Notes under the pieces: generated by a model
Database searches by the model: none
What the model was told of the DNA's origin: nothing
Seen by the model: the letters and a program-made list of their open reading frames with translations, nothing else
Translations under genes and position numbers: made by a program
Assembly (NCBI RefSeq): GCF_964204865.1
Contig: NC_135259.1
Coordinates: 9,486,001 to 9,550,000 of the forward strand
DNA: 64,000 nt
From: Styela clava
Lineage: Eukaryota
Direction of reading: 5' to 3'
Part shown: piece by piece, positions 12,749 through 35,800 of the stretch
Layout of the letters: each line of letters starts with the position of its first letter
How positions within the stretch are numbered: the stretch's first letter is position 1

Positions 12749-13118
12749 TCAAATTCTGAATGATCTTAAGAACAATTCCCTTCATTATAATTGTTCCAAT
12801 AAGGTTGCTATTTTTATACATTATGTATATTCAACGGCTCAACAATATAATATGCCCGATTTTTTATTGTTGATTTGTGTACGATGTGACACGTTTCATT
12901 CATCAGTTATTGGTGTAAATTTTCATTACCAGGCGTATATTTAATTCACTCCTAATTCAAATTAATTCAATTAATTTAATAAATCAATAATAAATTAATA
13001 GATTTTATTATAATAATAAATTAATTAATTTAATTCAAATTTTAAATGATCTTAAGAACAATTCCCTTTTCCATCATTGTTCCAATAAGGTTGCTATTTT
13101 GATACATTACGTATAGAT
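12749..13118. repeat. Direct repeat of ~80 bp flanking an AT-rich low-complexity spacer
   Basis: TCAAATT..AATGATCTTAAGAACAATTCCCTT..TTGTTCCAATAAGGTTGCTATTTT.ATACATTA.GTATA at about 12749-12830 and 13035-13118. Confidence 0.85.
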
Positions 13119-16100: not shown

Positions 16101-16312
16101 ATTTAAAATTAATTTTCAAAAGCGATACTGAAATTTCCAGTATTGTTTTTGTTTGTGATCTAACATTCGGAAGATCAAATCCAGCACTTCGACAGTCTAC
16201 TCTTTATTGACCCCTAGCGGGTTCGAAAATACGAGATGATCCTTTTTTCGTTGCAACCATGGCGCCTCGTGATTGTGACAATATATAAGAAGAAGAAGAA
16301 GAAAATTCTTAC

Positions 16313-19300
16313 CATGCTGAAACTGGTTTTTCACCCGGCGGGCATGTTCTAGTAATTTCTTCGTATTCCAAGCCGCACTTATTTCCTCGAAGACGTTTCT
16401 GAATCAATCTTTCACCATAAGTATCTCCGTCGGCGGGAATTGTACAACAGGCACTCCAACCGCTCCAACCCCACTCGCAACACGGACCTACAAAACAAGG
16501 ATATTCTTAGTTGTTTCAGGTATATACATACGCAGTTATACAAGTAATATTCATAAAATATACAAGACTAATGAGCACTTTGAAAACCAATTATACCTGC
16601 GTCGCAGAATTCCGTATGGGTTGGTAGACCAAAACATAAACCTTCTCCTGGTTTTCCACCAATACATATTCTGGATCTCACCTACAAAAATAAATGAGAA
16701 ATGTTTGAACTTGCTTTCTTTTTTACATACAAAGTTGATATTGGATTGAGTAATGACAAACAAAAAAACGGAAGTTTCAATGAGTAATTCTGAGCTACGC
16801 TTAAATCCGGAGCATTAGCGTAAAAAATATAATATACATTCATCCTACATATAGTCATAAAAAGCTAATAGTCTCTCTACCTTGCAAATGTGTAAGGCTA
16901 CACCAACCTCCACTCGGGACTCGAAATACGTAACCGAAATACTTATCTTTGATAATTTATATTTCAATAATAATCAGAAAATCATATTAAAAATCTTTGT
17001 CAGAATATATTTAAAATTTCTAATCAACATTCCCTTCATGCGAATAGGGCGAAGAATCATTGAATGGAACAAAAAGGTTAATTTATTCTTCCAAGTTTGT
17101 TTTTAAATACATATGATTTAGCATTATTGATGTTAAAATAAATATAGTGTAACTAACCCTTTGTCCTTCACCACATGAAGCACTGCACGGTCCATAATTA
17201 GACCAACCGAACCAATAGGCACATGGTCTGGTATTGCATTTCACTTTTTCGAGCTCGCTTGGTTTGTTGCACGAATGGTCTCGCATTCTTGTCCTGGTAC
17301 CATCACCGCAAGTTGTGGTACATGGAGTCCATTGTGACCATTCGAGATAGTCACCTACAAAGTAATAATAAAAAATAAATTCATGCATTCTTCTTCAACT
17401 TGGCTTGGTTATCGTAAAGAATAGTAACTGCAACTGTCCTCAATAATATAAGCAATTTTCTAAACCTGTAAATGCTGGTTCAAACCGGCTGGAACGACGG
17501 TTTATAAATTACCAAGCCATTATTAAAATATTGATTGGAATGAAAGTCTGATAGCTCGCAATTGGGTAAGAATATATACTTTAATATACACGGCACTTAC
17601 CCTCAAATGTGTTACAGGGTTCGGCTACAACTTCGTCGGGTTCACCACAAGTATGTGAGCGAGATCTAACGTGAGTTCCTCCTCCACATGATGCTGTACA
17701 ACGTGTCCAATCTGTCCATGGTCCATATGTACCTCTGTGAGTGTTGCAAGGAACCACTTCCACTTCGGGATCAAGATCACAGTTATGTGTTCGGAATCTA
17801 ATATGCAAAATATTATGGAATAATAAATCATTGTTTAAAATGTTTTTATCTTGGGGCTAACAACACCATGTAAAGGACTTCGTAAAATTCGCACCTGGTT
17901 TGTTCACCACCTTTACAAGTTGCAGAGCATGGTGTAAAATCGCTCCAATCACTCCATTCGCCATTGCCCAAATTGCATTCTCGATTTTCCACACTATCTC
18001 CCAAACATCCAGCCATGCCAGCTTGTCCGTATTGACACTCTCGGGTACGAATTTGGATTCCGTTTTTACATGTTGCAGAACATCTACTCCATTCCGTCCA
18101 GCCTGACCACATTTCGCAATCTCTTTCATTGCAGGCCTATATCGAATATAAAAACATAGTGTTTGTTCAAACATGGAATAACAACACTTCATGAAGACAT
18201 ACAATCTGGTTTTCTAACATGGATGGTGTTGTGACTGTATTCTGTACTGTTAAGTTTATGTTAAGGTTAAGATAATCGAACAACGTGTACATGAATAAAT
18301 GCATACATATATGTTAATTTTTTTTTCTATATTAAGCGGTAATTCTCACAGAAATAGTTGTAATTGTTCAATTGTCATAGTCGCTAAAATATTGGTTTCA
18401 CAGTGTTTCAAACGAATAAATATGATGTTATGTGTGAGATCATACATGCAAAATGGACAATTCTCTTGCAATAAAGTGCAAAAATATATGAATAATATTT
18501 AATGTTCTGTGGACGTACCTGCGGTTCGTATTGATCATCAAGTCCGCAGGTGTGTGATCTTCTTCTAGTTCTAAGTCCACCACCACATGACTTCGAACAG
18601 GTTGTCCATTGATCCCAGACCGTCCAAGCACCACCAAATGTGTTGCAATCTCCTGTGTCGATTTGATCGTCGAGGCCGCACGAATGGCGTCGGGTCTGTA
18701 AGCGTTCATTTAACCAAAATTATAAATAGGAAGGGTACATAAAACTATCGCAGTAGTCACAACTACTTACCCTGGTATGAGTGCCTCCTCCGCACGTTCT
18801 AGTACATTGTGACCATACAGACCATGGTCCGTAGTCTCCTGGGTAAGTGTTGCATACATCCACTTCCGAATCATCCGGTTCACCACATGTATGACCCCGT
18901 GTTCTTGAACGATAACCCCCACCACAAGTTACGCTACAATCAGTCCATGATTCCCAGTTCGTCCAGTCGCCTGATTTGTAAAAATTATTGGTCATGTAGA
19001 TTAAACAAGTACTGAAATGCGTTATTACCTATTATTGGCTGGTATACTAAAGTAAATCGTAAACGTCGCTATATTTCAAATACATTTTGCTTCTAGCAAA
19101 CGCAACTGGTGGTTTGTGACATCTATTCCACATTCAATTATACTAATAATATTACATTTATATCTAGAGTTGGTCTGATTGTGATTCACTTCTAACCTTG
19201 TTGTGTATTACACACTTGTGTTTCTATTTCGTCGTCAAGTCCGCAAGTATGAGATCTGGTTCTCGTTTGGAATCCTCCTTTGCAGGTAGCCTAATAGAAA

Positions 19301-22300
19301 ACAACCGCATTAGCGATGGGAATTAATTTCAGTATATTTTCAGTTCGTTGGTGGTTTATTTGCATAACTTTGATGTGAGTAGTAATGACAACGTATAACA
19401 AATGACCAACAGGGAACTCATATGAGATAAAACGTTCTAAATTACACACCGAACATCTTGTCCATCGGGTCCATTCTGTCCATTGGCCCATTGATATGGT
19501 ACAGCTGTCAGTTTCTAATGCTTCTCCGTCACAACCAATCATTCCAACTTTACCGTTTCTACATTGCCGGCTTCGAATTCTTGTTCCTGTAAGCACAACA
19601 AGCAAGTTTCTCAAACCGAGATTACATTTGGCATTGCTCGCCGCGACCATATCTATATACATTATAATCCAATAGATTGTCATTGATTTCAAAGTTTTCT
19701 AAGATTTGTTTGAATTGAATTTTACAAAAATAATGAACAGAGTCAGTCATGTGCAAGATGTCATTTCTCCAATCCTCAAAATTTGAAACAGCTTAATGAA
19801 TGACATTCGTATTACACTTTTATTTGAACTTACAATATAAGCTTTGAAAATTACTTGGAAACTTTGTATAAAAATTGTGCAGAAGTTAGAGGTAGTTTTA
19901 ATGCACACTAACCTCTGAAACATGTAACAGAGCATCTTGCCCAAATTGACCACGGTTCCCATTCAGGACAAGGCTGAGTGGCGCACGGTGAAACATCTCT
20001 GTCAGGGTCGGGCAAACATGAGTGTTCTCTTTGTCTCAAAATAATAGCGCTTCCACAAGTTTTGGGACACGGACTCCATGGTGACCAGCTGTCGTATTCA
20101 CCATCTGGGTAAAAGTAAGAGTTTATGACGAGGTATGAAAAATAGTGCATATGTTTCATAAAATTTAAATTCTACGAAGTCAACATTCTGCTATAACTTC
20201 CCTTTTAATAATTAATAGTTGTATATAGCCACGATATTTCATTCGTTGAAAAACATTCTACACGAATGAAGAAGAATACGCACCTCCTGCATTACATTCG
20301 CGAATTTGAGTGTCAATTGGACGTCCTTGTGAACAAGTTGTAGCCCGAGTTCTGACCTGCTCTCCAGTAAAGCAGGTAGTACTGCACGATGACCAGGATG
20401 TCCATTCCAACAAAATGCAACATTGTTTAAGTCCACATGGTTCAGCCTACATTTAAAAACAAAAAATAATATTTATACAAGTTCAAAACAGAAAACACGT
20501 TGTTGAATTAGCATTATATATCGAATATTCCAATGAGCATTTTTTGTATTGGCTACAACAATAACTTTTGAAATATTTCTGGCTGATAAAAATTTTTCAA
20601 CAAACAATAAATATAATTTTCTAACTTGGATTGGGATATAAAACATTAACATTTAGTGAAACTGACCTCAACTTCGTTTTCAGCTCCACAAATTCCTGAC
20701 CGTCTTCGCGCTCTTGTTCCAGTACCGCATGTAACGGAGCAAGGCCCCCATAGTGACCACGGTCCATGGAAAGGTGGTTGTCCACAAATACGCGATTCAG
20801 TGTCGACAGGTTCGTCACAGTTATGGAATCTGTATCGCATTTGATCTCCTCCAAGACAAGTCTGAGAACATGGTCCCCAATCAGACCATTCCGAATAAGT
20901 TCCCCCACTACCACACACTCGTCTCTCGATTTGTGGGTTTAGGCCACAACTGTGAATCTGTTGTCTAATCTAGAAAATATGTCATTGCTATTATTACAGT
21001 GGGTGACACGAAAAAATAAGCGAATATGCTTCACGTAAGAAAAAAATTGATAACAATGGTTACATTCGTCAAGTATGATGGAAGCTGCATAGCATTGATG
21101 GGACGGTGAAGGTATTCGATAAATTAGTCTATTCACATTTTCAACACAATTTCAATAAACAACGCTCACTATGTCCACTTGATATTTCAATAATATAAGT
21201 TACCTGTTGACCAGTACAAGTGCTGCTACATTCGGTCCAATCAGACCATGAACTGTAACCGCCTGGCCCTCCACATTCACCAACTTCAATCTTATCTTGC
21301 ATTCCACAGGTATGCTTCGCTGTTCGAACTCGTTGACCACCCGGACATGTTCTTGAGCACCTGCTCCATTCTTCGAAAGGTAAGTAGGTTCCAGAATCTG
21401 TGTTGCATTCTCTGTGAGATTGTTCAAAATATCAATTGGTATGATGGCGCACAAAGAAAAGGCGACGTTTTGGAAAACTAAACCAAACATGTATGACATG
21501 ATATGAATGATTTTCTCAAAGTAACGTTTGGAATAACCTACTTTATAAGTCACTTATAACATTCAACAAAACGTTCCACAAACCTGACTTGAATTTCTGG
21601 ATCTTTGATTTCGCAAATGTGAAGTCGCCTTCTAAACTGGTTCCCGCCGCCGCAAGTGACGGTACATTGACTCCAGTCATCCCAACCACCGTACCCTGGA
21701 TCTTCGCCACAGAATCTTGTTTCGACCTTGTCTTGTGCTCCGCAACTGTGCGTTTGACTTCTTGCCTGTGACCCTCCTGGGCATGTTTTGGAACAGATTG
21801 ACCAATCACTCCACTGACTGTAAAACCCTGGCCCTTGGTTGCAGATCTGAACAACAAAAACGTAAAGATTACTATTTTATATAATAAAATTTAGTTTAAA
21901 TAAACCGAGTCTTGTCAGTCCTGTTGACCCTTATAGTGGAAGAAGTCGGGTAGAAAAAATAAATGAGAAATTGGGGACATAATTTACCTCGACATCAATC
22001 TCATCATCAATTTCAGGGCAAGTGTTCTTTCTTACTCTTCTTCTTCGTCCAGTCAGACAGGTGACATCACAAGTACTCCAGTCTGACCACTGTAAGAATA
22101 CACAGCATGGTCTTTCGTTGCATACTCGAATTTCTCGCTCTGTACCATCAGAATTTCCTGGCAAGGCGATAGCTGTATGCAAAAACAAATGATTTTATTA
22201 TTGAAACCGTTTTTTTTTTTTATTGGTTGTACTTATTTTCATATCATCAATAATTAAATGTTTAAGAAAAATTTAAAAATCACGATTATGCCCTCGGGAG

Positions 22301-25300
22301 AAATGTATTTGTAAACACAACGTAGGGAATTCTTGTAAAAACACTTGTTTGTCGGGGAATTGCTCGTTGCTTTCGACGTTGGGCTAATTATGCGCTTAGC
22401 ATTCAAATAACTTCCTGATTGGTGATCTAAGAATTCTAAGCTTTGATACTAATTGTGAACCATGTTCACATATGTCAGATATCACAGACAAATGTATCGT
22501 CGGATAACGACGCCTAACTTCTTCTGTAAAAATATAAGTCTCAACAATGGATATTATTATCTAATGCTATATTATTATGATACTTACGACAAGAATGCAC
22601 TCTGCTTCTGAATTGGGTACCGGTGTCACATTGCTTGGTGCAGTCGCTGTATCCAGACCATCTTCCCCAGCTACCAGGAGATCCACAAATTTCAGAGTCT
22701 TCCTGCAAGATTAAGCATGTTAGTATCGAATATATGGATAAATTGATATGTTGTTCAAATATAAAGTTGTTAAACTAAGCAATCACTAGCTATGTGTACT
22801 TACTTGTCTTTCGCTTGTACACACTTGGAACCTGAGACGAGTACGTTGACCGCCGATACAGGACTGACTGCAAGCTGACCAGAATCCCCAGTTAGTGTAT
22901 CCACCTGCAAAATAACAAAAATACTCAATAATTCCTTTACTGTGGACGTTAGTTATTGTCATCAATAACACACAGCTCCGTTGTTAATGTGAAACAGAAC
23001 CATGCCCCTGTACCGACTTGTATTGTACGTTAGTGTATTCATGTATTATAGCTGAGAGTTGGGTAAGCTATAGAGCGCATGCGACCAACCATATTAAAAG
23101 AATATGCTACTTTACGTGTCTTTGACACTAATGTCAATAAGCCGAAATCGCTTTGCTCTGAAAACTTTTAAACGTCACATTCGCTTGAAAACATCAAGAA
23201 CTAAAAGATGACTCTAATAGCATAGCAGCTACAGGATGGTGAGTAGTTTAAGATATTATTAATTCGATTAATTATTTTTAATTTATTAATTCAAGTATGT
23301 TGAACTTGTTGTACAAATTGGTACCCTTCTGTTATTAATACGAGCATGTGCCTTTTTTATTCGCCATTAAAAACCCATTCTATCTTCATTTAAAATTATA
23401 GATTAAGTGATGTTGGAAATAAAAAAATTCGAGCAGTGACCACAAATGAATGTACTCAATATGTTTAATAGATTCCGCACGAAAAACAACAATTGTGCAT
23501 TAAAGTTCCATTGTTTTGCGAGGAAATGTTGTAGCTTGCATGTCATTCAAACAATTCTTATATGACACGAAGTGAACCAATGAATCGTTTTGTCATTTTT
23601 TATTTTCGTTCTTGTTGTTACCCTATTAAAAAAATCGCGTTTTTTATTCATTACTAGACCAATTGCTTGGAAATTTTCAGTGGTTAAGTATTGTTTTTAC
23701 TTCAAACAATTTTGTGGGTTCTATGTGGTTCGTTTTTTTTGTGTGCGATAACGTCATCGAAATTAAAAAATTGCGCACCTTGTGTCTGTTTCGCGTTAGT
23801 GGTTATGATTAGTCGTTAAGACTGCGCTCTGGTAGACTGCTGTGGCAGATTGAATACCGTTCTACTTCGTTTTGACCTTTCTGTCTATATATATTAGCAT
23901 CGCTTTCTTATTTTGCTAGCAGCATAGGCGAGCATGTACATGAAGTTCTGTTATTTTTGACACTAATGCTTTTTTAAGTTTGATTACGCACAGTGATATC
24001 CATTCATCACAATGTGTTTTAGCTGCAGTATGAAAGGTTACCTATTTCTCCGCAATCTTCGATCTGTGTGTCCTGTTCGTTGGTACATGAATCGTATCTT
24101 ACTCTAACTCTGCTGCCACCAGGACAAGTAGAAGAACAACTAGACCAGGCCAACCATTCTCCCCATGTACCAGGAAATCCGCACGTCTCTGATTCAAATT
24201 CTTCAGCTTCGCATGTATGAATTCGTGATCTGGCTCTGGTACCACCCGGACAGCTCTTTGAGCATGGAGTCCAGTTAGACCTGAAAACATTATTCGGTAA
24301 AACAAATTGTTTTCAACAACCCAAGTAAGAAATGCTCGGCAATTCAAATTCCAATTTGTAGAATTCAATTGCGAATAGATTTCTGTTTTGAAATTCAACT
24401 TTAAACTCTTAAAATTTCCGAACAAGCGTTTCCAAGATATATACTTGCTATACCTTAATATTGTTATTATTGCTCACACCGTATAAATATGGATCGTTTG
24501 TTGAATTCTTTTAGTTGTTTATAAAAAAGTTTTTTGCCGCAATTAAAGGGACTATTTATTTCAAATTTTCATTACGTAAAGATGGTTGACGTCGCTATCG
24601 AGTCATTACTTTTATTATTTAAAATTTTCATTTTTTTTCAATTTGTCCCATAGATAGAACACTATATTTTACACATAATTTTGCTGTGTATCTTGATTAG
24701 AAGAAACTTTTTTTTCCCGTTACGTTGACTGCCTACGAATGACCTCCTCAAGTATGCGCACCAAGATGGCGCACAGCCTGAACTCAGGTTGTGTACCAGG
24801 TTAGGGTTCAGGTTGTGCGCCATCTTGGTGCGCATACTTCAGGAGTACCCATTTGAATTTTGCTCTCGTTTCAAAGACGCGCTTACTGTGTAAAGAAAAT
24901 AACGTACCATTCCAAGTACACGCCTGGCTGACCGCACTGACGTACATCAAACTCGTCATCTAACCCACATGAGTGACTTCGTCGGCGGGATTGAAATCCA
25001 CCAGGACAAGTTGTCGAGCAAGATTCCCAGTAAGACCAATCTCCGTAGTTTCCTGGACCTGTTTATGAATGAAAGAAAATAATATTGGTGAGTCCAGTAA
25101 ATCTTGTTTTTCAATCTTTTTGGGAATTTGTAACTATGTGAAGGGGTAAGATATTTGATGCTGGCGATGGGAGTACATCCAACATCTCCATGAATTGTAT
25201 TTCTTGGTCATCTTTCACTAATAAATTGTTTAATTATATCATTTTTAAGTTATTGCTTATTTATATATATTGCTTGTAATTTAAAAAAACTCCGTTAAGC

Positions 25301-28300
25301 GACCGTTCTGCACCGGTTCAGTGACTAATCACCTGTCCCGCAGTCTTATATTGTGATATGGCTTTTTTTAGATCAAGATTTTTTCCATTTTTTTTCTCTT
25401 CTTGAACGTACCTGCGTCGCATGGTTGTGCTTCTGTTTCGTCTGGTATTTCTGGACACACATCAGCTCGTGTACGTCTTTGGACACCCTTGAAGTAAAAC
25501 GTAAAGCGTTATATATATATGTTTAGGAAATATGGACAGAACAGCATAGAATTTGTCGCAAATGAAAGTAGAAACCATACCATATTGCATGTAACTGAAC
25601 AGGCCGACCAGATGCTCCATCCCAGTTTACCACAGCACGGTTGTTCATTACAAGCTCTGACTTCGATTTTGTCGTCCAATGCACATGTATGTATCTAAAA
25701 GTCAAAAACAATATCTTTATGAGTAAACTCAATCTACTTTTCAATAGGTCTTCACAACAACGTATCCTTTGATATAATGGGTTTACAGATTGGACTGGGC
25801 AAGAAAGACAATCATACGGAGATTCTGTTTCTACTACCACACGTCCGTGGCTTTGTTCTAAGCAAAGCTGAAAAAGAATTGTAATGTCACATAAGCAAGT
25901 AAGTCTAAATACCTGTTTCCTGGTTGAAAATCCCCCGTCACAGGACGCTGAACATGGCGTCCAATCAGACCACGCGCTGTAGGATCCATCTCCGATGTGA
26001 CATTCTCTAGAGGTCGAAGTAACACCAATACAACCTGTTGTGTAACATGTTAAAGTAATAAATTTCTGCTATACAGATATTAGTTTAATTTAAAGTTGTT
26101 GAAAATGATACGATCTATAAAAATTGTCTCGCCGGCACCACTTTAGATATTTTTTATTGGTATCAAATAACCTGCGTGGGTGACACTGGAAATTGGTAAT
26201 TTTACACTTTTATCAGCCAATTATGTCGACTCTACATCGTACCGCAAAAAGTTTACTAGTATTTTGAATTTGAAAACAACAAAAAAATACTCGTAATTTG
26301 TTTTTAAAAAGAACCTATTTTGGTAAATTTTCGACAGCAAAAACTTTTTTTTCAAAGTGTAATTGCACTTCGATATTTTTGGTGAAGAAAATTTTGCATA
26401 ATTGTTTTGTCGATTCTGTGCTATCAATTCAATATTACATGTTCTTAGATGATGCAGAAATGTTTTATAAGCACGTAAGAACTGCGTTGACAACCTAATT
26501 TAACGCTAAAACCACTTCCTAAACAATCAACGTTCTTTCATTTCATTGAACGAGAGAAATATCATCATCAGACTTGTATCGTTCTGTACCATCCTCGCAC
26601 TTTTTGTATTTATTTTTAGACTTGTTGTGATACGTCGCAATCACAGCACGTCAGTGATAGCATAATACGAAATTGGGAAATCATGTACTAACGTTGTAGC
26701 ATTTTTTTTTTAATATTATTCCTCAAAATATTTTCCATTTAGATTCATAAATTTTGAGATGATAAAAATCCGATTAATTTACCTGGTTCCCCCACGGATG
26801 CCGCATAGCAAACTCTCGTTCTAGTTTGTGATCCTTTACCACAACTTGTACTGCATTGACCATAGCCTGACCAGCCACTCCAGTAACCACACTGATTGCC
26901 AACAGGATTGGCACATTTTCTGTGCGAAACAAGTAAAAGAGAAATGGTAATAGATTACAATCTTTGGCCTAACTAAAAATCTTATCCTTAATATACAATG
27001 ATAAGATTTTGAAAATAATTGAAGACACAAAATTCGGCCCGCTTACTGGAATCAAAAATAATTTCAAACGTTTGTTGAATTTTTTATTATACTACTCGCT
27101 AATGCTACTTGATTTGAATAGTTATGAATTAGATATGTAATAAGGTGGGATTTCTATTTTTATACAGTTTTTTGTTTACAGCTATAAAAAAATCGATGAC
27201 ACTAACTCAACTTATGCGACTATCTTGACTGCTCATATTTCTATCGTAGACTGTTTTTGAAAATAAATACTGCAAAATTAAAAAAATAATTTGATATTAT
27301 TTATAATTTCTCACTTGTAATCAAAACAGTTTCCTTGACATGCACCTTCACCTGGAATACATCCATTACAACGACGCATTCTTCTTCTCACTCCCATTCC
27401 ACAATAGCCTTCGCAGGCACTCCAGCCACCCCATGGATACCATCCACAACCTGCACATGAAAATATACATTTCCGTCATTTAAGAAACCCATTATATATA
27501 AATATTCGAGTATATAGCGAATATGTTGGAATAAATTCATTCATACTGAAATACAAAGTGAAGAAATATTTCAAATCTATAATATTAATGATGACATATC
27601 AATTTTTGATAAAACAAACATTACCATTTAAATAATTTATCCTAAATATTTCTCTTCAAAATTTTCAGGATCCGATTTCATCGGTTATTGAATTTTTGAT
27701 TTTATCTCAATTGTTCACTACCCTGGTCGTGGATTCTCTTCACTTCTGAGTTAGTGATCTAGCTGTCATTTAGCGTTTTAATATAAAAAACATATTTTAC
27801 ATTATTCACGCCGCTTCTCATTAATAGCAATAAGAACGAATATTTGTTCTAAAAGGTGGAATATCTTGTAACAAACACTTACGGGGAGCTGTTGGTCTTG
27901 TGGTATAAATTTGTATCGAAGGTGTAGGCGTTGCAGATCTAAGCATAACTTCTTCTTGCGGTGTAAATTGTGAAATGACAATAATGAGTTCAAGTTGTTG
28001 TTCGTTTATGAGATTTGCCAAGAAATATTCTCTCGTCCGCTTGAAATTGTTTACTAAAGGCTTCAAAAATTCTTCAATTTCTAGTTCTTTTTTGGTTGGT
28101 GTTGGTGTTGGACGGGGTCGATACACTCTCGTTGGTTTCACGTATGGTTTAGGATTGTACGGCTTGGGTTTTGGTTTGTACGGCTGAGGCTTTGGATTGT
28201 ATGTTCTTGGCGTACGGGGGTTGGAATATACTCTTTTATCTCCCAGTAAATAAGTTCTGTCTGCAAAATGATATATTGTTTATTAATTGTTATTCATAAT

Positions 28301-29803
28301 AATTATGAAAATTGTAAATTGTGATGTGGTATCGAACAACGATTTAAAAACAGTCCGCATAGGAAGGGATCAAGGTTTCTCAATATTGCAAGAACAGGTT
28401 TAACTTATAATAGGATTATTTATGTATTCATACTATTTCTACCAGCAACTATTAAAATATTATCCGCAGTCTACATTCATATATCGTCATTGTAACTGCG
28501 TCATAATTTTCTTCAAATGACCGCGTAGACTTCAGAAAGTTGAATCATCGTATTTTAACTTATCATTTATTGTTCATTGAAGAATCCGAACAGAAGAAAG
28601 TTACCACAAAATCTTCGAAGCCTTTTTCCTGTGAACACGCAATTTAACCAATGGTCTACAATGGTCGTTATCCGATACATGGTCTTTCTCGACGAATCAT
28701 CATCCAACATAGCGGATAGGACTTCTTCTGCTTTTGATCTTGTGTATTGTTGCGTATTTCTTTTGAAGCATTTTGGCTTATCCTGTAACAAAGTCAAGTT
28801 TATCAAATATCTGTTCATATTGTTTATTTGAACTGAAACTTAACGCACGCTCTCAAGCTACAATTAAATTGCCAGACCATTCATACGTCAGTCATATACC
28901 TCTTTTTAACTAGAGCACATCTCTGTTTAATCTTTACTATAAATGTTTAAAAATACACGTGAATTTCATTCGTGGTTTATCAGTTTTATAAAAGATTCAG
29001 ATTACCTTCTCGCTTAATACTTACAATATTAGTGTCGTCGTAGCAGCAATTCTTTTTGTTACATCTTGCTTCAGTAATGTTCTTTTGTAAACATTTTTGT
29101 TGTTTTCGTTTTGGTACTCGACAGACCAAACCTGAAATATTGTAGTTTTTGCGTAATATTACTATCTTCTTATTGATGGCGAGAAGAATGCTTGCTTTAA
29201 ACCAAAGTTACACTGTTTTGATATTTATCTTTGTTTAACGGATCATTTTTTCACGATTTATTTGATTTACTACAACTTTGTATTGAAACTACTCAAATTG
29301 CATTAACATTTACTAGAGTGCATTTTTTTCTCACACTGAGTTTGGAGAAATTTAAAAAAAATGATAATAACACATTGTACGCCACCAACACCAGAAGTTT
29401 TTCATCTGTTGAAACTAAATGATATTGATGTATATATAGCTAATAAAGCAAATATGACCACGGGTGATTTCGTATATTAGCGATTTACAACTTTTATGTT
29501 CTGTTTCCTTGCGTAAAAATATTTACAACTTATATGATATTCTGAAGTTTCTAAATATATCTCGGTCATCCAATACGTAATTACTGAATTTTGAAATACT
29601 GTTCGATCAGAATTCATACTTGTCAATGTCGATGTCATTTGAATAACCGTTTCTTTGTCTAATCCCAAATTTCCAAAATTAGGCTCGGTATCTTCCTCTA
29701 CAACTTCTACATTTTCTTCAGTTTCTTCAAGTGAAAATACGTTGTCACAATGAACAATCCCGAGTGCACCAAGGCATAGCAGTGCCAGCAATATCTTTCT
29801 CAT
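16313..29803 (-). CDS. Large secreted protein: signal peptide + trefoil (P-type) domain + Tyr/Lys/Pro-rich segment + 28 thrombospondin type-1 repeats and 1 atypical terminal repeat (at least 1650 aa; final exon not resolved)
   Basis: GT-AG, phase-consistent exons: 29803-29527, 29131-29025, 28782-28605, 28260-27883, 27450-27315, 26919-26783, 26034-25913, 25694-25581, 25487-25412, 25058-24908, 24280-24042, 22904-22804, 22702-22588, 22172-21988, 21846-21584, 21411-21204, 20969-20667, 20446-20284, 20104-19913, 19586-19450, 19290-19197, 18970-18771, 18695-18519, 18136-17895, 17797-17601, 17354-17158, 16681-16597, 16487-16313 (4949 nt, ending at a phase-2 donor). Signal peptide MRKILLALLCLGALGIVHC. 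Trefoil CRVPKRKQQKCLQKNITEARCNKKNCCYDDTNIDKPKCF. Repeated WxxWxxCSxTCGGGxxxRxRxC units. Confidence 0.93.
24741..24849. mobile_element. Fold-back MITE of the same family in an intron of the TSR gene
   Basis: CTCCTCAAGTATGCGCACCAAGATGGCGCACAGCCTGAAC ... GTTCAGGTTGTGCGCCATCTTGGTGCGCATACTTCAGGAGTACC. Left terminus is eroded and no TSD is visible. Confidence 0.8.
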
Positions 29804-32800
29804 TGTTATGGTAGTATAGCGCCACAAGTATAGCTGAAATAAGAAAATATGATAGGCTATTGTTAAAGTTCAATTGTATTTAGTTCAGCAGAAACGTTAT
29901 AATACCCACTGTAAGTTGCTGATTAATTATAAGCACTGATTTTTATGCAACCTTTTTATTTAATTTATGTCGTTCGCTGTTACACGATGACGAGATAATG
30001 TTTAGGTTTAAGTATATATGTTGTCAATGAATATGAGTTTTTGTAACATGTAAGCTTTGATTCAATCTTCAAAAGAAAGAGCAAAATTCATTGGGTATTG
30101 CGTTGAGCTCATTTTTGTTTTCATAGCGGTTAGAGATCATACATTCAGAATCGGTCTAGTTAAATTCTTTTTTAGTTTAAAAAGCAAACTTTTATTATAT
30201 GAGACATTTTTCATATTATAGCAGAAATATATATATTAAATCACGTTCGTTTAATTTTGACGTAATCAATACAGAAGAGAATCTCCTCTGTGATGCGCAA
30301 TTCACCTCGGTTGCTAAACTAACGACTTTTATCTAACGCGAGATGTTTATTTGAGAATCTCACTCTGTATGTTGATTCTAAATGTCTGCATTTTAATTTA
30401 TCCATAACACCTAAAAAATATATTTGCCACCAACCCCAATTCATCAAATCAAGTGTCTGAGCTGCTGAGCAGATGTTTAACCACATTACTGCCAATTACT
30501 ACCATCTAAAAACAGACATTCATCTTATTCTAGCACTTTATACATTATTTCGCTCTTTACTAATTCTTTTTGAACGGAAGTACTCCACAGACGTATGCCT
30601 TAGACATGATTCTGGTCGTGATTTTCACGCCTATTTATCGCCAGAATTTAAGTAGCCCTCGACGAAAAAAGATTGATGAGAAAAAATAATATCGTTTCTA
30701 TCTATTCGTGATATACTGCATTCAACTTCATGGATTGGCCCGAGGCACGCTAAAACGTCAGAGGTATTTTATATGATTTTAACGATATGGTGGACAACAG
30801 AAACGGTACACACAACACTGTTCTCTTTTGCCTTGCAAAGAGTCGAATAATCATAGTCGGGGATCATGCTCTTCATTTCAGTTCAAACTGTCGAGAAAGG
30901 GGGCTGCTAAGAAAAATCATAATACGCCAAAAAATTCGAATGCCCGATGGTATAACGACGTATTGAATATTAATCACAATCATTGTATATTCAAAACTTT
31001 ATAGATATTTCTTCTGGAAATATTTGCTATTTTGTTAGGCCAGGAAAGATAGCACATACGGTTTTTGCCGATATAAAAAACTGTTGTAAAGTTTTATTCC
31101 ATATCTGTAATAAAACAACTTTGACAAACGTTATCAGATTTGACATGCTATTCAATATTTTTTGGTTTGATACAATATTAAATCGGGTTACAGGTTAAAA
31201 TTCAAAATATGTCAAATTGTACGAGCAACGCAAAAGTTTTTTTTTAGAAGGCAAATGGACGTTGTAACGTAAACAAACAACACACTCATTTATAAACAAC
31301 GTTGGTCAGGTATCGTCAAATGACACGCATTTGATTTAGTTCACCTTGCGTGGGATGTATAGACAAAATTTTGTTTTTGTCGTAATTTAACTTTTATTAA
31401 TGACTGCAAAATTCATGCTTACACAAAGTTTACATTTATGCCTAAACAGAAAGTGTTGACGAACTGTTACTTCTTGAACATTTTGATTAACTTTCATTAA
31501 CTTCTCTATTTTGTTTATCAGAAATTGCGATAACAATACTTAAATTTATTTTCTTCTTAGTAATAATAAATTCAGTTACCGATCTTTGTGTTTAGCTATC
31601 ATTTGATAAATAGACTTATAGTGAATGAGAGTTAATATGAAAACAATGGATCATGTTTAAATTATATCCTTACTTGCTCATAACTCCGTTAAAAATGAGT
31701 AAGTTTCCTGAAAAAATACGGGTCGAGCGGTTCTTAGTCATACTACGAAATATGCGAAACAATTGCTACAGCTTATCTGATAAACAATTTATAGTTCGTA
31801 CCACCCCGTACCGTTTTGGACAATCGACGGTTTTGTCAGCGTTTCGTCAGTAAAGCGTTTCCGTTCAGGGTTAAAATTATGTGAAATATTCTGATATTTT
31901 TGCTTTTATGTAATTTTATAATTGAAAATGAAAGGTATTTTAGTTTTTTGTGTTTCCCCAAAATAACAACTTTTACTTCATTATCTGTAGGAAATATCTT
32001 AAGAACATAAATAATATAATCCAAAAAATGAAGATTGAAACGTATCCAAATTCAAAATTTGTAGAACCCAAACATAGTTTTTTAAACAACGGAATTGTAA
32101 TTTTTTTAGTAGATTTTTCTCGAAGTTTTAAGTTTTTTCGCATTTCTAAACGAATTTATATTACATAAATAATAAAACCATGCTGATAGCACAACCTTGC
32201 CTGATACCATATCTTCTATACATGACTCGAAAAGTTCATTCACGTTAATTTCCTTTGTGGCATTTGTCGTGTAATTGATCGACGTACGCATTTTATTTAA
32301 ATATATTTTTACCCCACCCTCCCTCAAATTCAATATTGACATGGAACACTCATTATAAGTGAATGTCCCAAAGCTGCTTTCAAAAAGTTTTGAAAAAATT
32401 CCTATAATTAAATCAGGAAAGTCAAAATTAATGAAAAATCAATTTACGATGATTAATTGTTTCCTCTACCTGGTTTTTCTAAAACGAAAATTAATTAACT
32501 ATTCCTATATTTATTGTTGTTATCACGTTGGTGATATATGATCTGGATGATTATCTTCAATATTGAGGTTCTGTTCACCGACAACACAAATATGAAATAC
32601 TAAACGATTCCTTGTTCAAAGCTTCATCATGTTTGTTTTATTCGCGTCTTTGGAGTTAATTAATTTGATATACTTCACGAAATTTTATATCGTTTTTATG
32701 TTTAAAAAACCTACGATTTTAAAAATTTAAAGATTGATACACCGAATTTTTTTCTACAAACGTCTTTACATTTGATACTGATCACATTCTGTCGGGATAG

Positions 32801-35800
32801 TTTGATAAAGTTCTTTTGAAAAAAAAATATATCGATCTTTTGGATCTTTCTCTGTGTAGATTTTATAACCCAGTGATGCAAAGAACAATAAAGAGTTTGT
32901 CTGAGTGTAAAAATATTATTTTAATTTCTCGCGCTGGCTCAAACGTCATTTCTCAGAATACTATTGTACAGGAAAAATATTAAAAAAGCAGCACAAATTC
33001 TTTGTAACGGGGATGTCAAAACATTACATAATGATATAGCTGTCATACGTGGGCATTGTTGTTATTGACGCACTTGCAATCAGTCTGCAATAACTTTTGT
33101 TTACGCGTCGGGCTGCAGGAAAAATATTATGAAAGCTTTTAATGACAAAGTTCAATTAATTGTTTCGCAAATATCGTGAGCTTGAGGTGATCATTGCTTT
33201 GTTTGTCTTTATTTATGTCACGGGGATTTAAAAACAGCATTGACGATATAAACCGCCGCAAGAGCATACACCGCCACAGGAACTAGTCTTTAATAGTTTT
33301 ACTTCAAGTCGTTGTTCTATTCAAAGTATATCTAAATATTTAAACAAAAATGCACCCCCGGTGCACAATTAAAAGATAACATCTCATAATTCTGACTATC
33401 GCAAATTGCAAACAGTTACCACGATTTATAATTTGGAATTTATGATAATATTGCAATGTAAATCAAAAATGTATTACGAAATACATTTTTCTTGGGTATT
33501 TGTGATGGCTGCAATTTTCCTGCTTCTTAGCAATCTAGTCATGCATTGCTGCAAGCTTTTTAATAAATTCTATTAGGTTCTATGTTTGAAATAATTTATT
33601 GATTTTAATTTTACGGAATTATGTGAAGTAAAAATGAATAGAAAAATTATTAATGTAGAGGGTTATTTATTCAAATTTTACATACATTCAAATCATCGTT
33701 TCAAAATTGAGATAACATTTTTATATATATACATAATTGCTCCAGGATGTATCAAGTTGCATATTATTCCTGTTATGAAAGTTCTTAACATCCTTTAGAC
33801 CAAATATTGCTGAAGATAAGATTTCACAAGTATATACTGGCTATATAAATGTTAAACTTTCACCCTTAAATTAATTTCTTATATTGTTAATTCGTTTCTG
33901 CGAATCCTAATATTTTCTGTTTTAAATTAAAAAAACATTTATAATATATAAATAATTTGGTTTCGTAAGATTAGAATTTTTTTGAACACCCTCATAATAA
34001 CTTTCGCCTAATTCATCAGTTATTTGTACAATATAACAATTACGGAATTTTCACGAACGCGGTAACTTCCAAATTTAGAGAAAATTTCTCGTCGCCGGAC
34101 ACACGTGAACACTATTAACACTTAAAATCAATGATAATAAAATAATTACATAAATATAATTGCTTAATAAGTAGAAGTGCTTGACGTCACTTGTGTAAAT
34201 TTTAACACCTTTCTGTACAAACAATTCATTAACAAAAATTTCCTTGCGGCCTAATCGTATAATTATAAGGATATCCTTATAAGAAATGGATCCCCTGTTT
34301 CACATGTATTACCTATATAAAAGTAATATATCAAATTATATTTAATGAGCTGTAACTTGAGTAAGTCTTTGAGTTAAATTCTATTAAATGTAATTAGAAT
34401 TACGATTCTCGTTATATTCTTTCGTTTATAGTAATCCTATATATTACTACTATATGAAACATTTCAAAGAAATTCTATTATAAGAGTCAATTTAAAAAGA
34501 AAACGGTTTTTCATTTAACAGTGCATTTAACAAATAAGATTCAATTGTGTTTTTATTGCGCTACTCGCAGACGATTCATGTTTTGTCAACAGCAAACAGG
34601 AATTACAGCGAACGATATTCAACATCAAAAAAATTGAAAATGTACAAACATGTAATAGTGGGAAAGTATATACAAAAAAATATTTGTGGTAGAATATGAT
34701 AGATCCTTATAATGTTTTCAACGTTTTTTTATTGATAATTGAGTTAACCTAAGTACATAAACAATCCCACGGAATCATATCCAATATCGTATATGTAAAC
34801 ATGTTATGAAAAATATAACGTTGTCCGTGCAATACCTCTTTCGGTAGCTTTTTTCTAATTTTTTATGGCCGGTTTACGTAAAAATTACGTTGAAATTCAA
34901 TATCTTTTGATATTTCTTTGGTTACGAAAGAAGATTGTATTTATTATTGCGTTCTTAGATGTAGTACCATAAAAATTGATTGTTTTCTGCATGAAACAAC
35001 GAAATGTGTACATTAGGCTACATATTTGCACAATCTTAAAATAGTTAAACTTTGTTTATATCAATTGTCGTAACATTTATTTTCTCAAATTTCCATTTCA
35101 GTTCATTTTGGCCCAAATATATTAAACGGTAATTCTTATCTTTCCTATATCTATACCATAACTTAATGTATTTCGGTTTGATAAACGAAATATTTGCATT
35201 AAGCAAATTCACTTTTGAAATTCGTCAGAATGGATATTAATTTAAATACCAACAGGGAGATCTTATTATAGTATATAATGGTAAACATACTACCGGTATA
35301 TGTATATAAGTGCAAAGTCCTTCTCTTATGTTATATTGCGTTATCAGAAAAAACATTGATAACAAGAATAAAAAATTGCTATCAATTGTTAATAAATTCC
35401 AACATACCTGTTACAGCTTTGCTTCCGATTTTATGAAATCGTTGGCAGTGTCACGATGGTACGCAGCACAGGCTTTAAAACTTAAGAGAAATTTAGTTAT
35501 TATGCTAAATAACAAAACAAAAAAATTTAATATGAACATTGATTAGGAAATAAAAATTCGATTAGCGATCTCCTTGTTCTGGTTGCACGAACTTACGTCC
35601 ATTTTTGTCGTACAACAAGCTTTAAAAGCGTGCTATGCAATGACGCTGTATTCTTTTTACAAATAATTACTCATGAAAACTAATTTATATATATTTCAAC
35701 ATCTAGGAATCATTGATACGGTGCTGCAGCAAACAGTCCACGCATTTTTTGAACAATAATTGATCAAATTGTAGACTGGCTCTCTCTACGTATCTAAAAG

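What the first reader, a model, noticed from the sequence alone, without database searches (positions are those of the whole stretch)
16313..29803. Trefoil + Tyr/Lys/Pro repeat + 29-TSR secreted giant: candidate adhesive or mucus-net scaffold
Seen: signal peptide, acidic N-terminus, a trefoil domain with exact C-x9-C-x9-C-x4-CC-x10-C spacing (split over two exons and invisible in the ORF track), a basic Y/K/P segment, then 28+1 TSRs. No protease, Ig or TM domain appears in the mapped part. Known: trefoil domains bind mucin glycans; WxxW is C-mannosylated; CxxS/TC in TSRs is O-fucosylated by POFUT2; long TSR arrays occur in invertebrate matrix and adhesive proteins. Automated pipelines would probably label it ADAMTS-, hemicentin- or SCO-spondin-like, which the architecture does not fit. 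Inference: a rod-like, glycan-binding, cross-linkable structural protein of tunic, feeding mucus or attachment glue.
Basis: partly seen in the sequence, partly recalled or inferred. Interest (0 to 1): 0.75.

Follow-up and report, generated by a model that had tools for sequence, protein, structure and literature searches.

The report
Secreted trefoil-headed 29-TSR matrix protein gene
This is a real, expressed sea-squirt gene for a long secreted protein with one sugar-binding trefoil module followed by 29 thrombospondin-type repeats; the domain mix is unusual, it has two neighbouring sister genes, and what it does in the animal is still unknown.

Summary
A minus-strand gene of 28 coding exons (ATG 29803, TAA 16311-16309, about 1,615 aa) encodes these parts in order:
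- a signal peptide and an acidic stretch;
- one Trefoil domain, with Pfam PF00088 at 29.4 bits on exon 2 alone;
- a basic Tyr/Lys/Pro segment;
- 28 TSRs plus one atypical C-terminal TSR.

Spliced contigs from four runs in three studies join exons 1-4 to the TSR exons. Both alternative 5' exons carry in-frame stops, so the signal peptide is N-terminal. No protease, Ig or TM part was found.

New findings:
- It is one of three tandem, same-strand paralogues on contig C13. All three have a trefoil exon and a collinear 29-TSR array, at 51-55% identity.
- The Tyr/Lys/Pro exon is unique to this copy.
- Twenty of the 29 TSRs are a short four-cysteine variant.
- None of 20 other trefoil loci sampled in the genome has TSRs within 5 kb.

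Cross-species orthology could not be tested properly, since the joined protein was not searched. One unnamed exon-sized relative at 77% identity exists.

Earlier scan notes list other "trefoil-like + TSP1" genes on other DNA of this genome. I did not check them. They name the organism Styela clava.

The parts
35408..35440 (-). 3' end of alternative non-coding first exon b. The donor GT is at 35407-35406. The exon runs further upstream: the X1 contig holds 842 nt before exon 1.
   Evidence: The X1 contig's loose end matches the window at 35411-35440. There is an in-frame TAA at 35413-35411, read.
30435..30541 (-). Alternative non-coding first exon a, at least 106 nt; its 5' limit is not known. 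The donor GT is at 30434-30433.
   Evidence: The X2 contig's loose end matches the window at 30436-30465. There is an in-frame TGA at 30443-30441, read.
29620..29833 (-). Exon 1: 30 nt of 5' UTR, ATG at 29803, signal peptide (29803-29747), acidic stretch (29746-29621).
   Evidence: Joint 29129/29618 seen in 4 of 4 runs. Translation, hydropathy, charge.
29025..29131 (-). Exon 2: trefoil domain, first five cysteines.
   Evidence: Pfam PF00088 at 29.4 bits, E 7.5e-7. Both flanking joints seen.
28605..28782 (-). Exon 3: sixth trefoil cysteine, then about 50 residues with two further cysteines and no family match.
   Evidence: No Pfam family. Weak similarity to the same exon of paralogues B and C (E 0.3, E 0.022).
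27883..28260 (-). Exon 4: basic Tyr/Lys/Pro segment (about 28258-28094, heptad repeat at 28146-28201), then a Pro/Thr linker, a roughly 45-residue non-repeat acidic stretch and a second Pro/Thr linker.
   Evidence: Only a self-match in the own genome. 0 hits among 1.84 billion representatives. No Pfam or PDB relative.
27315..27450 (-). Exon 5: TSR 1 (7 Cys).
26783..26919 (-). Exon 6: TSR 2, N-terminal part.
25913..26034 (-). Exon 7: end of TSR 2 and start of TSR 3.
25581..25694 (-). Exon 8: end of TSR 3 and start of TSR 4.
   Evidence: TSP_1 at 17.9 bits, below the cut-off.
25412..25487 (-). Exon 9: end of TSR 4.
   Evidence: No Pfam hit on its own.
24908..25058 (-). Exon 10: TSR 5 and the first residues of TSR 6.
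24042..24280 (-). Exon 11: TSR 6 and TSR 7.
22804..22904 (-). Exon 12: TSR 8.
   Evidence: The acceptor is transcript-backed: the loose end of X1/X2 equals window 22873-22902. The donor comes from my model. Pfam.
22588..22702 (-). Exon 13: TSR 9.
   Evidence: Model. TSP_1 at 17.1 bits, below the cut-off.
21988..22172 (-). Exon 14: TSR 10.
   Evidence: Model. Pfam.
21584..21846 (-). Exon 15: TSRs 11 and 12.
   Evidence: Model. Pfam gives 2 stretches.
21204..21411 (-). Exon 16: TSR 13 and the start of TSR 14.
   Evidence: Model. Pfam.
20667..20957 (-). Exon 17: end of TSR 14, then TSRs 15 and 16.
   Evidence: Model. Pfam gives 2 stretches. The best solved relative is properdin, E 7.3e-10. An unnamed relative at 77% identity, P0001, exists.
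20284..20446 (-). Exon 18: TSR 17.
   Evidence: Model. Pfam.
19913..20104 (-). Exon 19: TSR 18 and the start of TSR 19.
   Evidence: Model. Pfam.
19450..19586 (-). Exon 20: end of TSR 19 and start of TSR 20.
   Evidence: Model. No Pfam hit on its own. The motif was read by eye.
19197..19290 (-). Exon 21: end of TSR 20.
   Evidence: Model. No Pfam hit on its own.
18771..18970 (-). Exon 22: TSR 21 and the start of TSR 22.
   Evidence: Model. Pfam gives 2 stretches.
18519..18695 (-). Exon 23: end of TSR 22 and TSR 23.
   Evidence: Model. Pfam.
17895..18136 (-). Exon 24: TSR 24 and the start of TSR 25.
   Evidence: Model. Pfam gives 2 stretches.
17601..17797 (-). Exon 25: end of TSR 25 and TSR 26.
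   Evidence: Model. Pfam.
17158..17354 (-). Exon 26: TSR 27 and the start of TSR 28.
   Evidence: Model. Pfam gives 2 stretches.
16597..16681 (-). Exon 27: end of TSR 28.
   Evidence: Model. No Pfam hit on its own.
16309..16487 (-). Exon 28: atypical C-terminal TSR-like module (CC...W-x-W...CC) and stop codon TAA at 16311-16309. A donor-like TG|GTAAGA overlaps the stop.
   Evidence: No Pfam or PDB relative. Only three copies in the genome, genes A, B and C.
16203..16208 (-). AATAAA, 100 nt after the stop. A further ATTAAA lies at 15899.
   Evidence: The lengths of the X5 and X6 contigs fit an unspliced 3' UTR (my arithmetic).

Best explanation
The locus is one gene for a secreted, cysteine-rich, non-enzymatic extracellular protein of about 1,615 residues.

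Shown:
- It has a cleavable-looking leader, a short acidic stretch and one trefoil (P-type) domain.
- These are followed by an unassigned ~50-residue stretch, then a copy-specific exon with a basic Tyr/Lys/Pro heptad repeat and Pro/Thr linkers.
- An uninterrupted array of 29 thrombospondin type-1 repeats then runs to the C-terminus.
- It is transcribed and spliced as modelled, at least through exon 12.
- It belongs to a three-gene tandem family in which the trefoil head and all 29 TSR positions are kept one-to-one.

Inferred:
- The TSR array forms a long, stiff, disulfide-locked and probably C-mannosylated and O-fucosylated rod. It would be of the order of 100 nm by analogy with properdin; that figure is recalled, not computed.
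- The trefoil domain at one end acts as a lectin that docks the rod onto a glycan-rich material.
- The protein would then serve as a spacer or cross-linker in an extracellular gel or fibre of the animal, such as tunic matrix, secreted mucus or adhesive.
- The Tyr/Lys/Pro insert gives this paralogue an extra sticky or oxidatively cross-linkable patch.
- Which extracellular material it belongs to is not known.
For: - Gene structure and expression: 10 GT-AG introns are seen as joints in spliced contigs, each in 3 or 4 of 4 runs from 3 studies. One X2 contig joins exon 4 to exon 11 and one X6 contig joins exons 1-2-3. The exon 11 to exon 12 junction is backed.
- Start codon: in-frame stops lie in both alternative 5' exons.
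- Domains: Trefoil at 29.4 bits. TSP_1 in 19 of 24 TSR-region exons, 25 stretches in all. There are 34 W-x-x-W, 25 C-x-x-S/T-C and 38 R-x-R motifs. The best solved relatives of a two-TSR exon are properdin and thrombospondin-1.
- No TM segment and no other family was found.
- Family: paralogues B and C lie on the same strand 54 and 70 kb away. Their exon-by-exon matches are collinear at 50.8% and 55.3% identity. Their trefoil exons score 24.8 and 21.5 bits. The family-specific C-terminal module occurs only 3 times in the genome.
- Keeping exactly 29 positionally matched repeats at about 50% identity argues for a constraint on length and order, which fits a structural rod.
- Analogy: TSP1 modules are proposed to tie a phenol oxidase to the tunic matrix in Styela rustica (PMC9395347, passages read).
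Against: - No tissue, stage or protein-level data were available, so a matrix, mucus or glue role is not shown.
- Glycan binding by this trefoil domain and glycosylation of the TSRs are inferred from motifs only.
- The Tyr/Lys/Pro element is short and is missing from both paralogues. No relative of it was found anywhere, so it may be an incidental insertion.
- One proteomic study of ascidian feeding mucus reports no mucus-specific peptides (bioRxiv 10.1101/2025.01.21.634085, passages read). This speaks against a mucus-net scaffold, although that study searched Ciona and Ascidiacea databases.
- Tandem duplication followed by divergence is also typical of immune recognition genes.
- Exons 13-28 and the 3' end are not directly transcript-verified. 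All three paralogues have GT right after the last conserved Trp codon's TG, so a small extra 3' exon is not excluded.
Confidence: 0.5

Rival explanations
1. It is a soluble immune recognition or opsonin protein. The trefoil domain or the TSRs would bind microbial glycans or LPS, and the long TSR stalk would act like properdin as a platform for complement-type or clotting reactions in blood or on mucosal surfaces.
For: - The best solved relative of a TSR exon is properdin (E 7.3e-10).
- The gene sits in a tandem, diverged three-gene family, a pattern common in immune genes.
- The same genome holds many TSR mosaic genes, including a factor-B-type protease on a TSR stalk according to an earlier scan note (s1-815922, unchecked).
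- Expression differs strongly between samples: the share of words held ranges from 0.36 to 0.00 across RNA-type runs.
Against: - The number and order of the 29 repeats are kept one-to-one between paralogues, rather than varying as in many diversifying recognition families.
- No effector, collagen, C1q, CCP, MACPF or protease part is present.
- The properdin match is a generic TSR match, and thrombospondin-1, TRAP and F-spondin also match.
Confidence: 0.2
2. It is an egg-coat, follicle or fertilisation-related extracellular protein. The trefoil domain would play the part it has next to ZP modules in vertebrate ZP1/ZP4 (recalled), and the TSRs would mediate sperm-coat or coat-matrix adhesion.
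For: - Trefoil domains occur in zona pellucida proteins; a paper on fish ZP genes mentions both trefoil and thrombospondin terms (PMC12155184, search listing only).
- An earlier scan note lists a TSP1-trefoil-TSP1-EGF-ZP gene elsewhere in this genome (s1-810938, unchecked).
- Expression is sample-specific.
Against: - No ZP, EGF or CUB module was found on any exon.
- None of the 20 other trefoil loci sampled has TSRs nearby, so there is no sign of a shared trefoil-TSR-ZP lineage.
- There is no expression evidence either way.
Confidence: 0.08
3. It is a divergent SCO-spondin-, hemicentin- or ADAMTS-like developmental matrix protein, for example a Reissner-fibre-type or basement-membrane component, and the true gene is longer than modelled.
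For: - It has a long TSR array.
- A donor-like GT sits at the stop codon and is conserved in all three paralogues, which leaves room for unseen 3' exons.
- One X5 contig runs about 380 nt beyond my stop (my arithmetic).
Against: - No EMI, vWD, TIL, LDLa, CTCK, vWA, Ig, EGF, reprolysin, spacer or PLAC match was found on any exon.
- No TSR-like or conserved coding block lies downstream of the last exon, either in the window or in the paralogues.
- The X6 contig length fits my exon sum to within about 9 nt and ends at the microsatellite just after TAA (my arithmetic).
- AATAAA lies 100 nt after the stop.
Confidence: 0.05

Closest known systems
Byssal TSP-1 protein of the pearl oyster Pinctada fucata (PMC4597212, passage read)
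   Same: [quoted passage not shown] The oyster protein is a proven component of an extracellular holdfast fibre.
   Different: The oyster protein ends in a vWA domain and has no trefoil domain, and its low-complexity part is Gly/Ser-rich rather than Tyr/Lys/Pro-rich. It comes from a different phylum, so this is an analogy and not orthology. No sequence comparison was made here.
Properdin (complement factor P)
   Same: Both are made of TSRs only after the leader and are rod-like. Properdin is the best solved-structure match of a two-TSR exon (E 7.3e-10).
   Different: Properdin has 7 TSRs and no trefoil head. The alignment needs gaps because most repeats here are shorter. Its role is immune.
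Trefoil factor peptides (TFF1-3) and trefoil-bearing mosaic proteins such as ZP1/ZP4, frog integumentary mucins and GH31 glucosidases (recalled)
   Same: One P-type domain with the six-cysteine spacing and a CC-[FY]-D ... C-F signature. It scores over the Pfam cut-off.
   Different: TFF peptides are small and consist only of trefoil domains. None of the mosaic types that I recall joins a trefoil domain to a TSR array. No paper in the searchable library was found that describes such a fusion.
SCO-spondin, hemicentin, ADAMTS/ADAMTS-like/papilin
   Same: They are large secreted proteins with many TSRs.
   Different: None of their defining non-TSR modules is present on any exon.
Other tunicate TSP1 mosaics: Tuphoxin of Styela rustica and Halocynthia aurantium (PMC9395347) and Ciona KH.L96.43 (PMC10962819), passages read
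   Same: They are tunicate secreted proteins in which TSP1 repeats are joined to an unrelated head. In Tuphoxin the TSP1 part is proposed to bind the tunic matrix.
   Different: Those proteins carry a tyrosinase or a trypsin-like protease and few TSRs. This one has no enzyme part and has 29 TSRs.
Mussel foot protein-1 type Tyr/Lys/Pro repeats (recalled)
   Same: A similar amino-acid palette (Tyr, Lys, Pro, Thr), a short tandem peptide repeat and a high pI.
   Different: There are only about 2.7-4 heptads, against dozens of decapeptides. No evidence of DOPA was obtained. The repeat is not conserved in the paralogues.

Membership tests
Trefoil (P-type) domain, Pfam PF00088 | Profile score over the curated cut-off (21 bits). 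| tested here: met
   Exon 2 alone scores 29.4 bits, E 7.5e-7, covering profile positions 1-33 of 43. The genome-wide scan finds the same exon at 28.1 bits. Paralogues B and C score 24.8 and 21.5 bits.
Trefoil (P-type) domain, Pfam PF00088 | Six cysteines spaced C-x9/10-C-x9-C-x4-CC-x10-C. | tested here: met
   Read by eye from the separate translations of exons 2 and 3, across a junction seen in 3 of 4 runs. The joined domain was not submitted to any tool.
Trefoil (P-type) domain, Pfam PF00088 | Three-loop 1-5, 2-4, 3-6 disulfide fold and glycan binding. | not testable with these tools
There is no biochemical data.
TFF peptides (TFF1-3) | A small secreted peptide consisting only of one to a few trefoil domains. 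| tested here: not met
   The protein is about 1,615 residues with 29 TSRs.
TSR superfamily (TSP_1, Pfam PF00090) | Profile matches, and the W-x-x-W / C-S-x-T-C-G / R-x-R layer motifs. | tested here: met
   19 of 24 exons E5-E28 match at E <= 0.01, 25 stretches in all, and 17 exons are over the cut-off. There are 34 WxxW, 25 CxxS/TC and 38 RxR motifs.
TSR superfamily (TSP_1, Pfam PF00090) | Six conserved cysteines per repeat. | tested here: inconclusive
   By eye, 9 repeats have 6-7 Cys and 20 have only 4. Pfam mostly aligns only profile positions 1-26 of 49, and properdin aligns with gaps. This looks like a short variant, but the fold was not modelled.
SCO-spondin | EMI, vWD, TIL, LDL-receptor A and CTCK modules interspersed with TSRs. 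| tested here: not met
   No such Pfam match on any of the 28 exons.
Hemicentin | vWA domain, long Ig array, G2F, EGF and a fibulin-type C-terminus. | tested here: not met
   No such Pfam match on any exon.
ADAMTS / ADAMTS-like / papilin | Reprolysin and disintegrin domains, or at least a Cys-rich spacer and PLAC. The TSRs are of the ADAMTS subtype. | tested here: not met
   No such modules were found. PF19030 (TSP1_ADAMTS) scores below PF00090 on every exon and mostly under its own cut-off.
Properdin | About seven TSRs and nothing else. | tested here: not met
   29 TSRs plus a trefoil head.
Thrombospondins proper | Laminin-G N-domain, coiled coil, vWC, three TSRs, EGF, type 3 repeats and the C-terminal domain. 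| tested here: not met
   None was found on any exon.
Bivalve byssal TSP-1-type fibre protein | Signal peptide, low-complexity region, long TSR array, vWA domain, and presence in the holdfast. | tested here: inconclusive
   The first three features are met. There is no vWA domain. Localisation cannot be tested here.

The most novel reading that the evidence does not exclude
The three-gene family would be a tunicate-specific class of 'lectin-headed molecular rods'. A trefoil domain would dock onto a defined glycan of a secreted material, such as tunic cellulose or sulfated glycan matrix, or the endostyle's mucus net. A fixed-length 29-TSR shaft made mostly of a short four-cysteine TSR variant would set the mesh spacing or cross-link the material. 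In this reading, the paralogue studied here has gained a new exon that adds a mussel-glue-like, oxidatively cross-linkable Tyr/Lys/Pro patch, which would make it the adhesive or sclerotising member of the family.
Probability: 0.15. Interest if true: 0.7.

Novelty: new variant of a known kind. Interest (0 to 1): 0.4.

Why it matters
Long TSR arrays recur in marine holdfasts and matrices, and trefoil domains are the classic partners of mucins. A natural fusion of the two, kept in three paralogues with an invariant number of repeats, would be a compact model for how a lectin head and a rigid spacer organise an extracellular gel.

For sea squirts it is a concrete, highly expressed candidate for a component of tunic, mucus or glue, all materials whose protein parts are poorly known. 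Styela clava is also a fouling and invasive species, so its attachment materials have practical interest.

If the gene turns out to be one more blood or matrix TSR protein, the finding is ordinary. All its domains are known, and the genome is rich in TSR mosaics.

Tried and rejected
- Orthologue search with the copy-specific exon 4 against 1.84 billion representatives gave 0 hits at E <= 0.001. This shows no relative of that exon. It is weak evidence about the whole gene, because the self protein did not appear either.
- Word search with exon 17 examined 1 candidate and kept 1. This was P0001, a 131-aa ORF from an unnamed Logan contig, 77% identical, which is much closer than the paralogues (33-41% on that exon). 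Its source could not be traced.
- A search for a conserved exon downstream of the stop found nothing. I ran tblastn of all minus-strand open stretches of window 1-16600 against 5.4 kb below paralogue B, and blastn among the three downstream regions. Only the last exon itself and a low-complexity repeat matched.
- Three small exons proposed by my chaining script (22523-22461, 18241-18203, 16907-16881) were dropped by hand. An artificial split of exon 12 and the four exons the script proposed after 16313 were also dropped. All of these break the TSR pattern. The three internal ones have lengths that are multiples of three, so removing them keeps the frame.
- 'Trefoil + TSR is common in this genome' was rejected for the loci sampled. 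I looked at 20 loci chosen from the 77 trefoil matches, 10 kb each. A regex that finds 24, 22 and 24 TSRs in genes A, B and C found 0 TSR cores there. TSRs further than about 5 kb away would be missed, and the rest of the 77 matches were not sampled.
- Exon 4 compared with the short Pro/Thr linker exon of paralogue C showed no similarity (E 0.77).
- Rfam on the whole window gave 0 matches.
- The bacterial promoter/terminator scan is irrelevant to this eukaryotic gene and is not used.
- Papers: 10 searches found no paper that describes a trefoil-TSR fusion or this gene. One search was badly framed (any 2 of 5 terms) and returned nothing useful.
- The coral paper PMC3204972 lists trefoil and TSP proteins as separate transcripts (passages read).
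- Supplements were not asked for. The S1 File of PMC10962819 and the supplementary tables of PMC9395347 and PMC12992692 might hold relevant tunicate genes.
- Run depths were not used to rank expression, as the tool advises.
- The organism name comes from earlier scan notes only.

Full report
**What is there**

The finding lies on the minus strand of a window that the tools place at contig C13, 9,486,001-9,550,000, of a 377-Mb assembly. Earlier scan notes name the organism Styela clava. I did not verify that name.

Open stretches rich in Cys and Trp run from about 27,475 down to 16,312 on the minus strand. They occur nowhere else in the window on either strand.

**Transcript evidence**

One search for sequencing runs listed RNA-type runs that hold about a third of the sampled words of 26,700-29,850, which is the share expected for exons only.

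I laid the contigs of four such runs (X1 and X2 from one study, X5 and X6 from two others) on 23,900-29,890. This gave 11 joints.
- Ten are introns with GT..AG ends on the minus strand, each seen in 3 or 4 of the 4 runs.
- The eleventh (24,766/24,832, one run, 20 letters on the short side) lies in an intronic repeat and is not a gene intron.
- Single contigs join exon 4 through exon 11 (X2, 1,719 nt) and exons 1-2-3 (X6, 520 nt).
- The exon 3 to exon 4 joint is present in 4 of 4 runs.
- The letters that run on beyond exon 11 in X1 and X2 equal window 22,873-22,902, so the junction to exon 12 is also backed.

**Start of the protein**

Exon 1 has an acceptor at 29,835-29,834, and the contigs continue upstream with letters unlike the laid stretch. 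Those letters match the window at 30,436-30,465 (X2) and 35,411-35,440 (X1). These are two alternative first exons, each followed by a GT.

Read in the frame of the ATG at 29,803, each carries a stop two or three codons before its end: TGA at 30,443-30,441 and TAA at 35,413-35,411. The ATG at 29,803 is therefore the first possible start, and the hydrophobic leader is N-terminal.

**Gene model**

Exons 1-11 follow the joints. I chained exons 12-28 with a small script that uses splice-site weights learned from the 11 known exons, an open frame and an amino-acid log-odds score. I then cleaned the chain by hand.
- Three small in-frame exons that break the TSR pattern were removed.
- An artificial split of exon 12 was removed.
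- The weak exons proposed after the stop were removed.

All 27 introns of the final model are GT-AG and the frame is kept throughout. The coding length is about 4,848 nt, or about 1,615 residues.

Every search below was made exon by exon, and split codons are shown as x.

**Domains**

- Exon 1: a 19-residue leader, then 42 residues with 12 D/E and 1 K/R.
- Exon 2: Pfam Trefoil, 29.4 bits against a cut-off of 21.
  - Exon 2 holds five cysteines spaced x9, x9, x4 and CC.
  - Exon 3 begins with four residues and then the sixth cysteine followed by Phe, which gives x10.
- Rest of exon 3: about 50 residues with two more Cys, and no family match.
- Exon 4 (125 residues) has no Pfam match, no solved relative and no relative among 1.84 billion representatives. 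In the animal's own genome it matches only itself.
  - It starts with a 55-residue stretch of pI 10.7 (Y7, K7, P15, R7, T7).
  - That stretch contains a 21-nt repeat of 2.7 copies, i.e. a K-P-Y-x-P-K-P heptad.
  - Then come a Pro/Thr linker, a roughly 45-residue acidic non-repeat stretch and a second Pro/Thr linker.
- Exons 5-28 encode TSRs.
  - Pfam TSP_1 matches 19 of these 24 exons at E <= 0.01, 25 stretches in all, and 17 exons are over the cut-off.
  - The five exons without a match (9, 20, 21, 27, 28) hold only halves of repeats or the atypical last module.
- By eye there are 28 canonical cores plus a last module that begins CC-x-W-x-W and has a second CC.
- No other family reached its cut-off on any exon. 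No exon other than exon 1 has a membrane-span-like stretch.

**A short TSR variant**

By eye, 20 of the 29 repeats have only four cysteines and are about 44 residues long. Nine repeats (numbers 1, 2, 4, 10, 17, 19, 24, 28 and 29) have six or seven.

Pfam mostly aligns only the first half of its 49-position profile to the short ones. The best solved relative of a two-repeat exon, properdin (E 7.3e-10), aligns only with gaps in my sequence after the R-x-R strand.

**The 3' end**

The frame ends ...W-TAA at 16,311-16,309, with AATAAA 100 nt further on. The letters TG|GTAAGA at that spot also look like a good donor. Paralogues B and C likewise have GT right after the TG of the corresponding Trp codon. 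That leaves room for a small further exon.

Three observations argue against a further exon:
- No conserved block lies downstream in any pairwise comparison.
- The X6 contig runs about 3,035 nt past exon 11, while my exons 12 to the stop sum to 3,026 nt. The contig would therefore end about 9 nt after TAA, where a (TTC)n run starts.
- The X5 contig runs about 380 nt further, which fits use of the ATTAAA at 15,899.

The last two points are my arithmetic. I take the TAA as the most likely end, but this is not proven.

**Family**

The last exon's module occurs three times in the genome, all on C13 and on the same strand. The first TSR also has its two best non-self matches there.

I fetched that DNA and found two further genes:
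- B at about C13:9,441,150-9,448,735.
- C at about C13:9,422,270-9,432,960.

Each has a leader-like first exon. Each has a trefoil exon, at 24.8 and 21.5 bits. Each has a TSR array that matches my exons in order, at 50.8% identity over 1,369 aligned residues for B and 55.3% over 1,330 for C. A few best hits fall on neighbouring repeats: exons 21, 23-25 in B and exon 17 in C.

Exons 1, 3 and 4 have no match at E <= 1e-3 in either paralogue. Exon 3 shows weak likeness (E 0.3, E 0.022). Neither paralogue has exon 4; C has a short unrelated Pro/Thr exon in its place.

By eye, C also has 29 repeat cores in the same order. The 29-repeat array therefore predates the duplications and has kept its number and order while diverging to about half identity.

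Trefoil domains are common in this genome, with at least 77 matches. However, in 10-kb samples around 20 other trefoil loci my TSR regex found none, while it finds 24, 22 and 24 in genes A, B and C. Earlier scan notes mention other 'trefoil-like + TSP1' genes on other contigs. I did not locate or check them.

**Relatives elsewhere**

The tools at hand hold no other tunicate genome. The word search only sees proteins of similar length to the query, so the full-length predicted protein, if it is on record, could not be reached from single exons.

Exon 17 found one candidate: a 131-residue ORF from an unnamed 1,295-nt contig, 77% identical over 97% of the exon, with intron-like flanks. This is far closer than the paralogues and looks like the same exon of an orthologue in a related animal. 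Its source could not be traced.

**What it most likely does**

Shown: a secreted, non-enzymatic protein with no membrane anchor, consisting of a trefoil head and a 29-TSR tail, expressed in some samples and almost absent from others.

Inferred from what these domains do elsewhere (recalled):
- TSRs are elongated three-stranded modules stacked by Trp-Arg layers.
- They are often C-mannosylated at W-x-x-W and O-fucosylated at C-x-x-S/T-C. There are 34 and 25 such motifs here.
- Properdin's seven TSRs span roughly 25 nm, so 29 would give a rod of the order of 100 nm.
- Trefoil domains bind mucin-type glycans.

The simplest mechanism is a lectin head that anchors a fixed-length rod in a glycan-rich extracellular material. 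In this paralogue an added basic Tyr/Lys/Pro patch could stick to surfaces or be cross-linked by phenol oxidases.

Two papers make this plausible:
- In Styela rustica a phenol oxidase secreted into the tunic carries a TSP1 domain that the authors propose binds the tunic matrix, and they link its enzyme part to tunic hardening (PMC9395347, passages).

One preprint found no mucus-specific peptides in ascidian feeding mucus, which argues against a mucus-net role. No paper found describes this gene or this fusion. I put the structural-scaffold reading at about 0.5, an immune reading at 0.2, and the egg-coat and 'longer known matrix protein' readings below 0.1 each.

**Novelty and verdict**

All the parts are known domain types, and the genome is full of TSR mosaics, so this is not a new kind of system.

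The unusual features are these:
- the trefoil-TSR fusion itself;
- its conservation in three paralogues with an invariant 29 repeats;
- the dominance of a short four-cysteine TSR;
- the copy-specific orphan exon with a mussel-glue-like repeat.

I rate it a new variant of a known kind, with interest 0.4. Its functional reading is reasonable but untested.

Noticed in passing
window 24741-24855 (intron 10 of the gene): A palindromic repeat of about 110 nt with very many copies in the genome. The first look gave 874 candidates. The 40 scored copies are 93-97% identical, and each also matches its own reverse strand at about 80-85%. This looks like a young MITE family. It explains the huge contig depth at 24,700-24,899 in all four runs.
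   Followed up: partly
window 30435-30541 and 35408 upward: The gene has two alternative non-coding first exons, about 0.6 kb and about 5.6 kb upstream of exon 1. The distal one sits in a contig with 842 nt of upstream sequence whose structure I did not resolve.
   Followed up: partly
own genome, C13:9441150-9448735 and C13:9422270-9432960 (loci L001, L004, L006, L007): Two tandem paralogues lie on the same strand, each with a leader, a trefoil exon and a collinear 29-TSR array. Paralogue B has fewer introns; one open stretch of 157 aa holds three TSRs.
   Followed up: yes
own genome, C2:17.86-17.97 Mb: More than 60 TSR-like exon matches on one strand within about 110 kb. This is a far larger TSR array locus or cluster, unrelated to this gene's C-terminal module.
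   Followed up: no
window 16286-16303: A (TTC)n microsatellite lies directly after the stop codon, and one RNA contig appears to end there.
   Followed up: no
window about 51682-51915 and 60303-60677, minus strand: Open stretches that read like annexin repeats. These are neighbouring genes upstream of the TSR gene and were not analysed.
   Followed up: no
protein P0001 (unnamed Logan contig, 1,295 nt): An ORF 77% identical to exon 17, with intron-like flanks. It is probably the same exon of an orthologue in a related species. Its source could not be traced.
   Followed up: partly
runs X7-X9 ('organism B'): Runs under another species label hold 6-8% of the exact 31-letter words of 26,700-29,850. 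This could reflect a close relative, a mislabel or a shared repeat.
   Followed up: no
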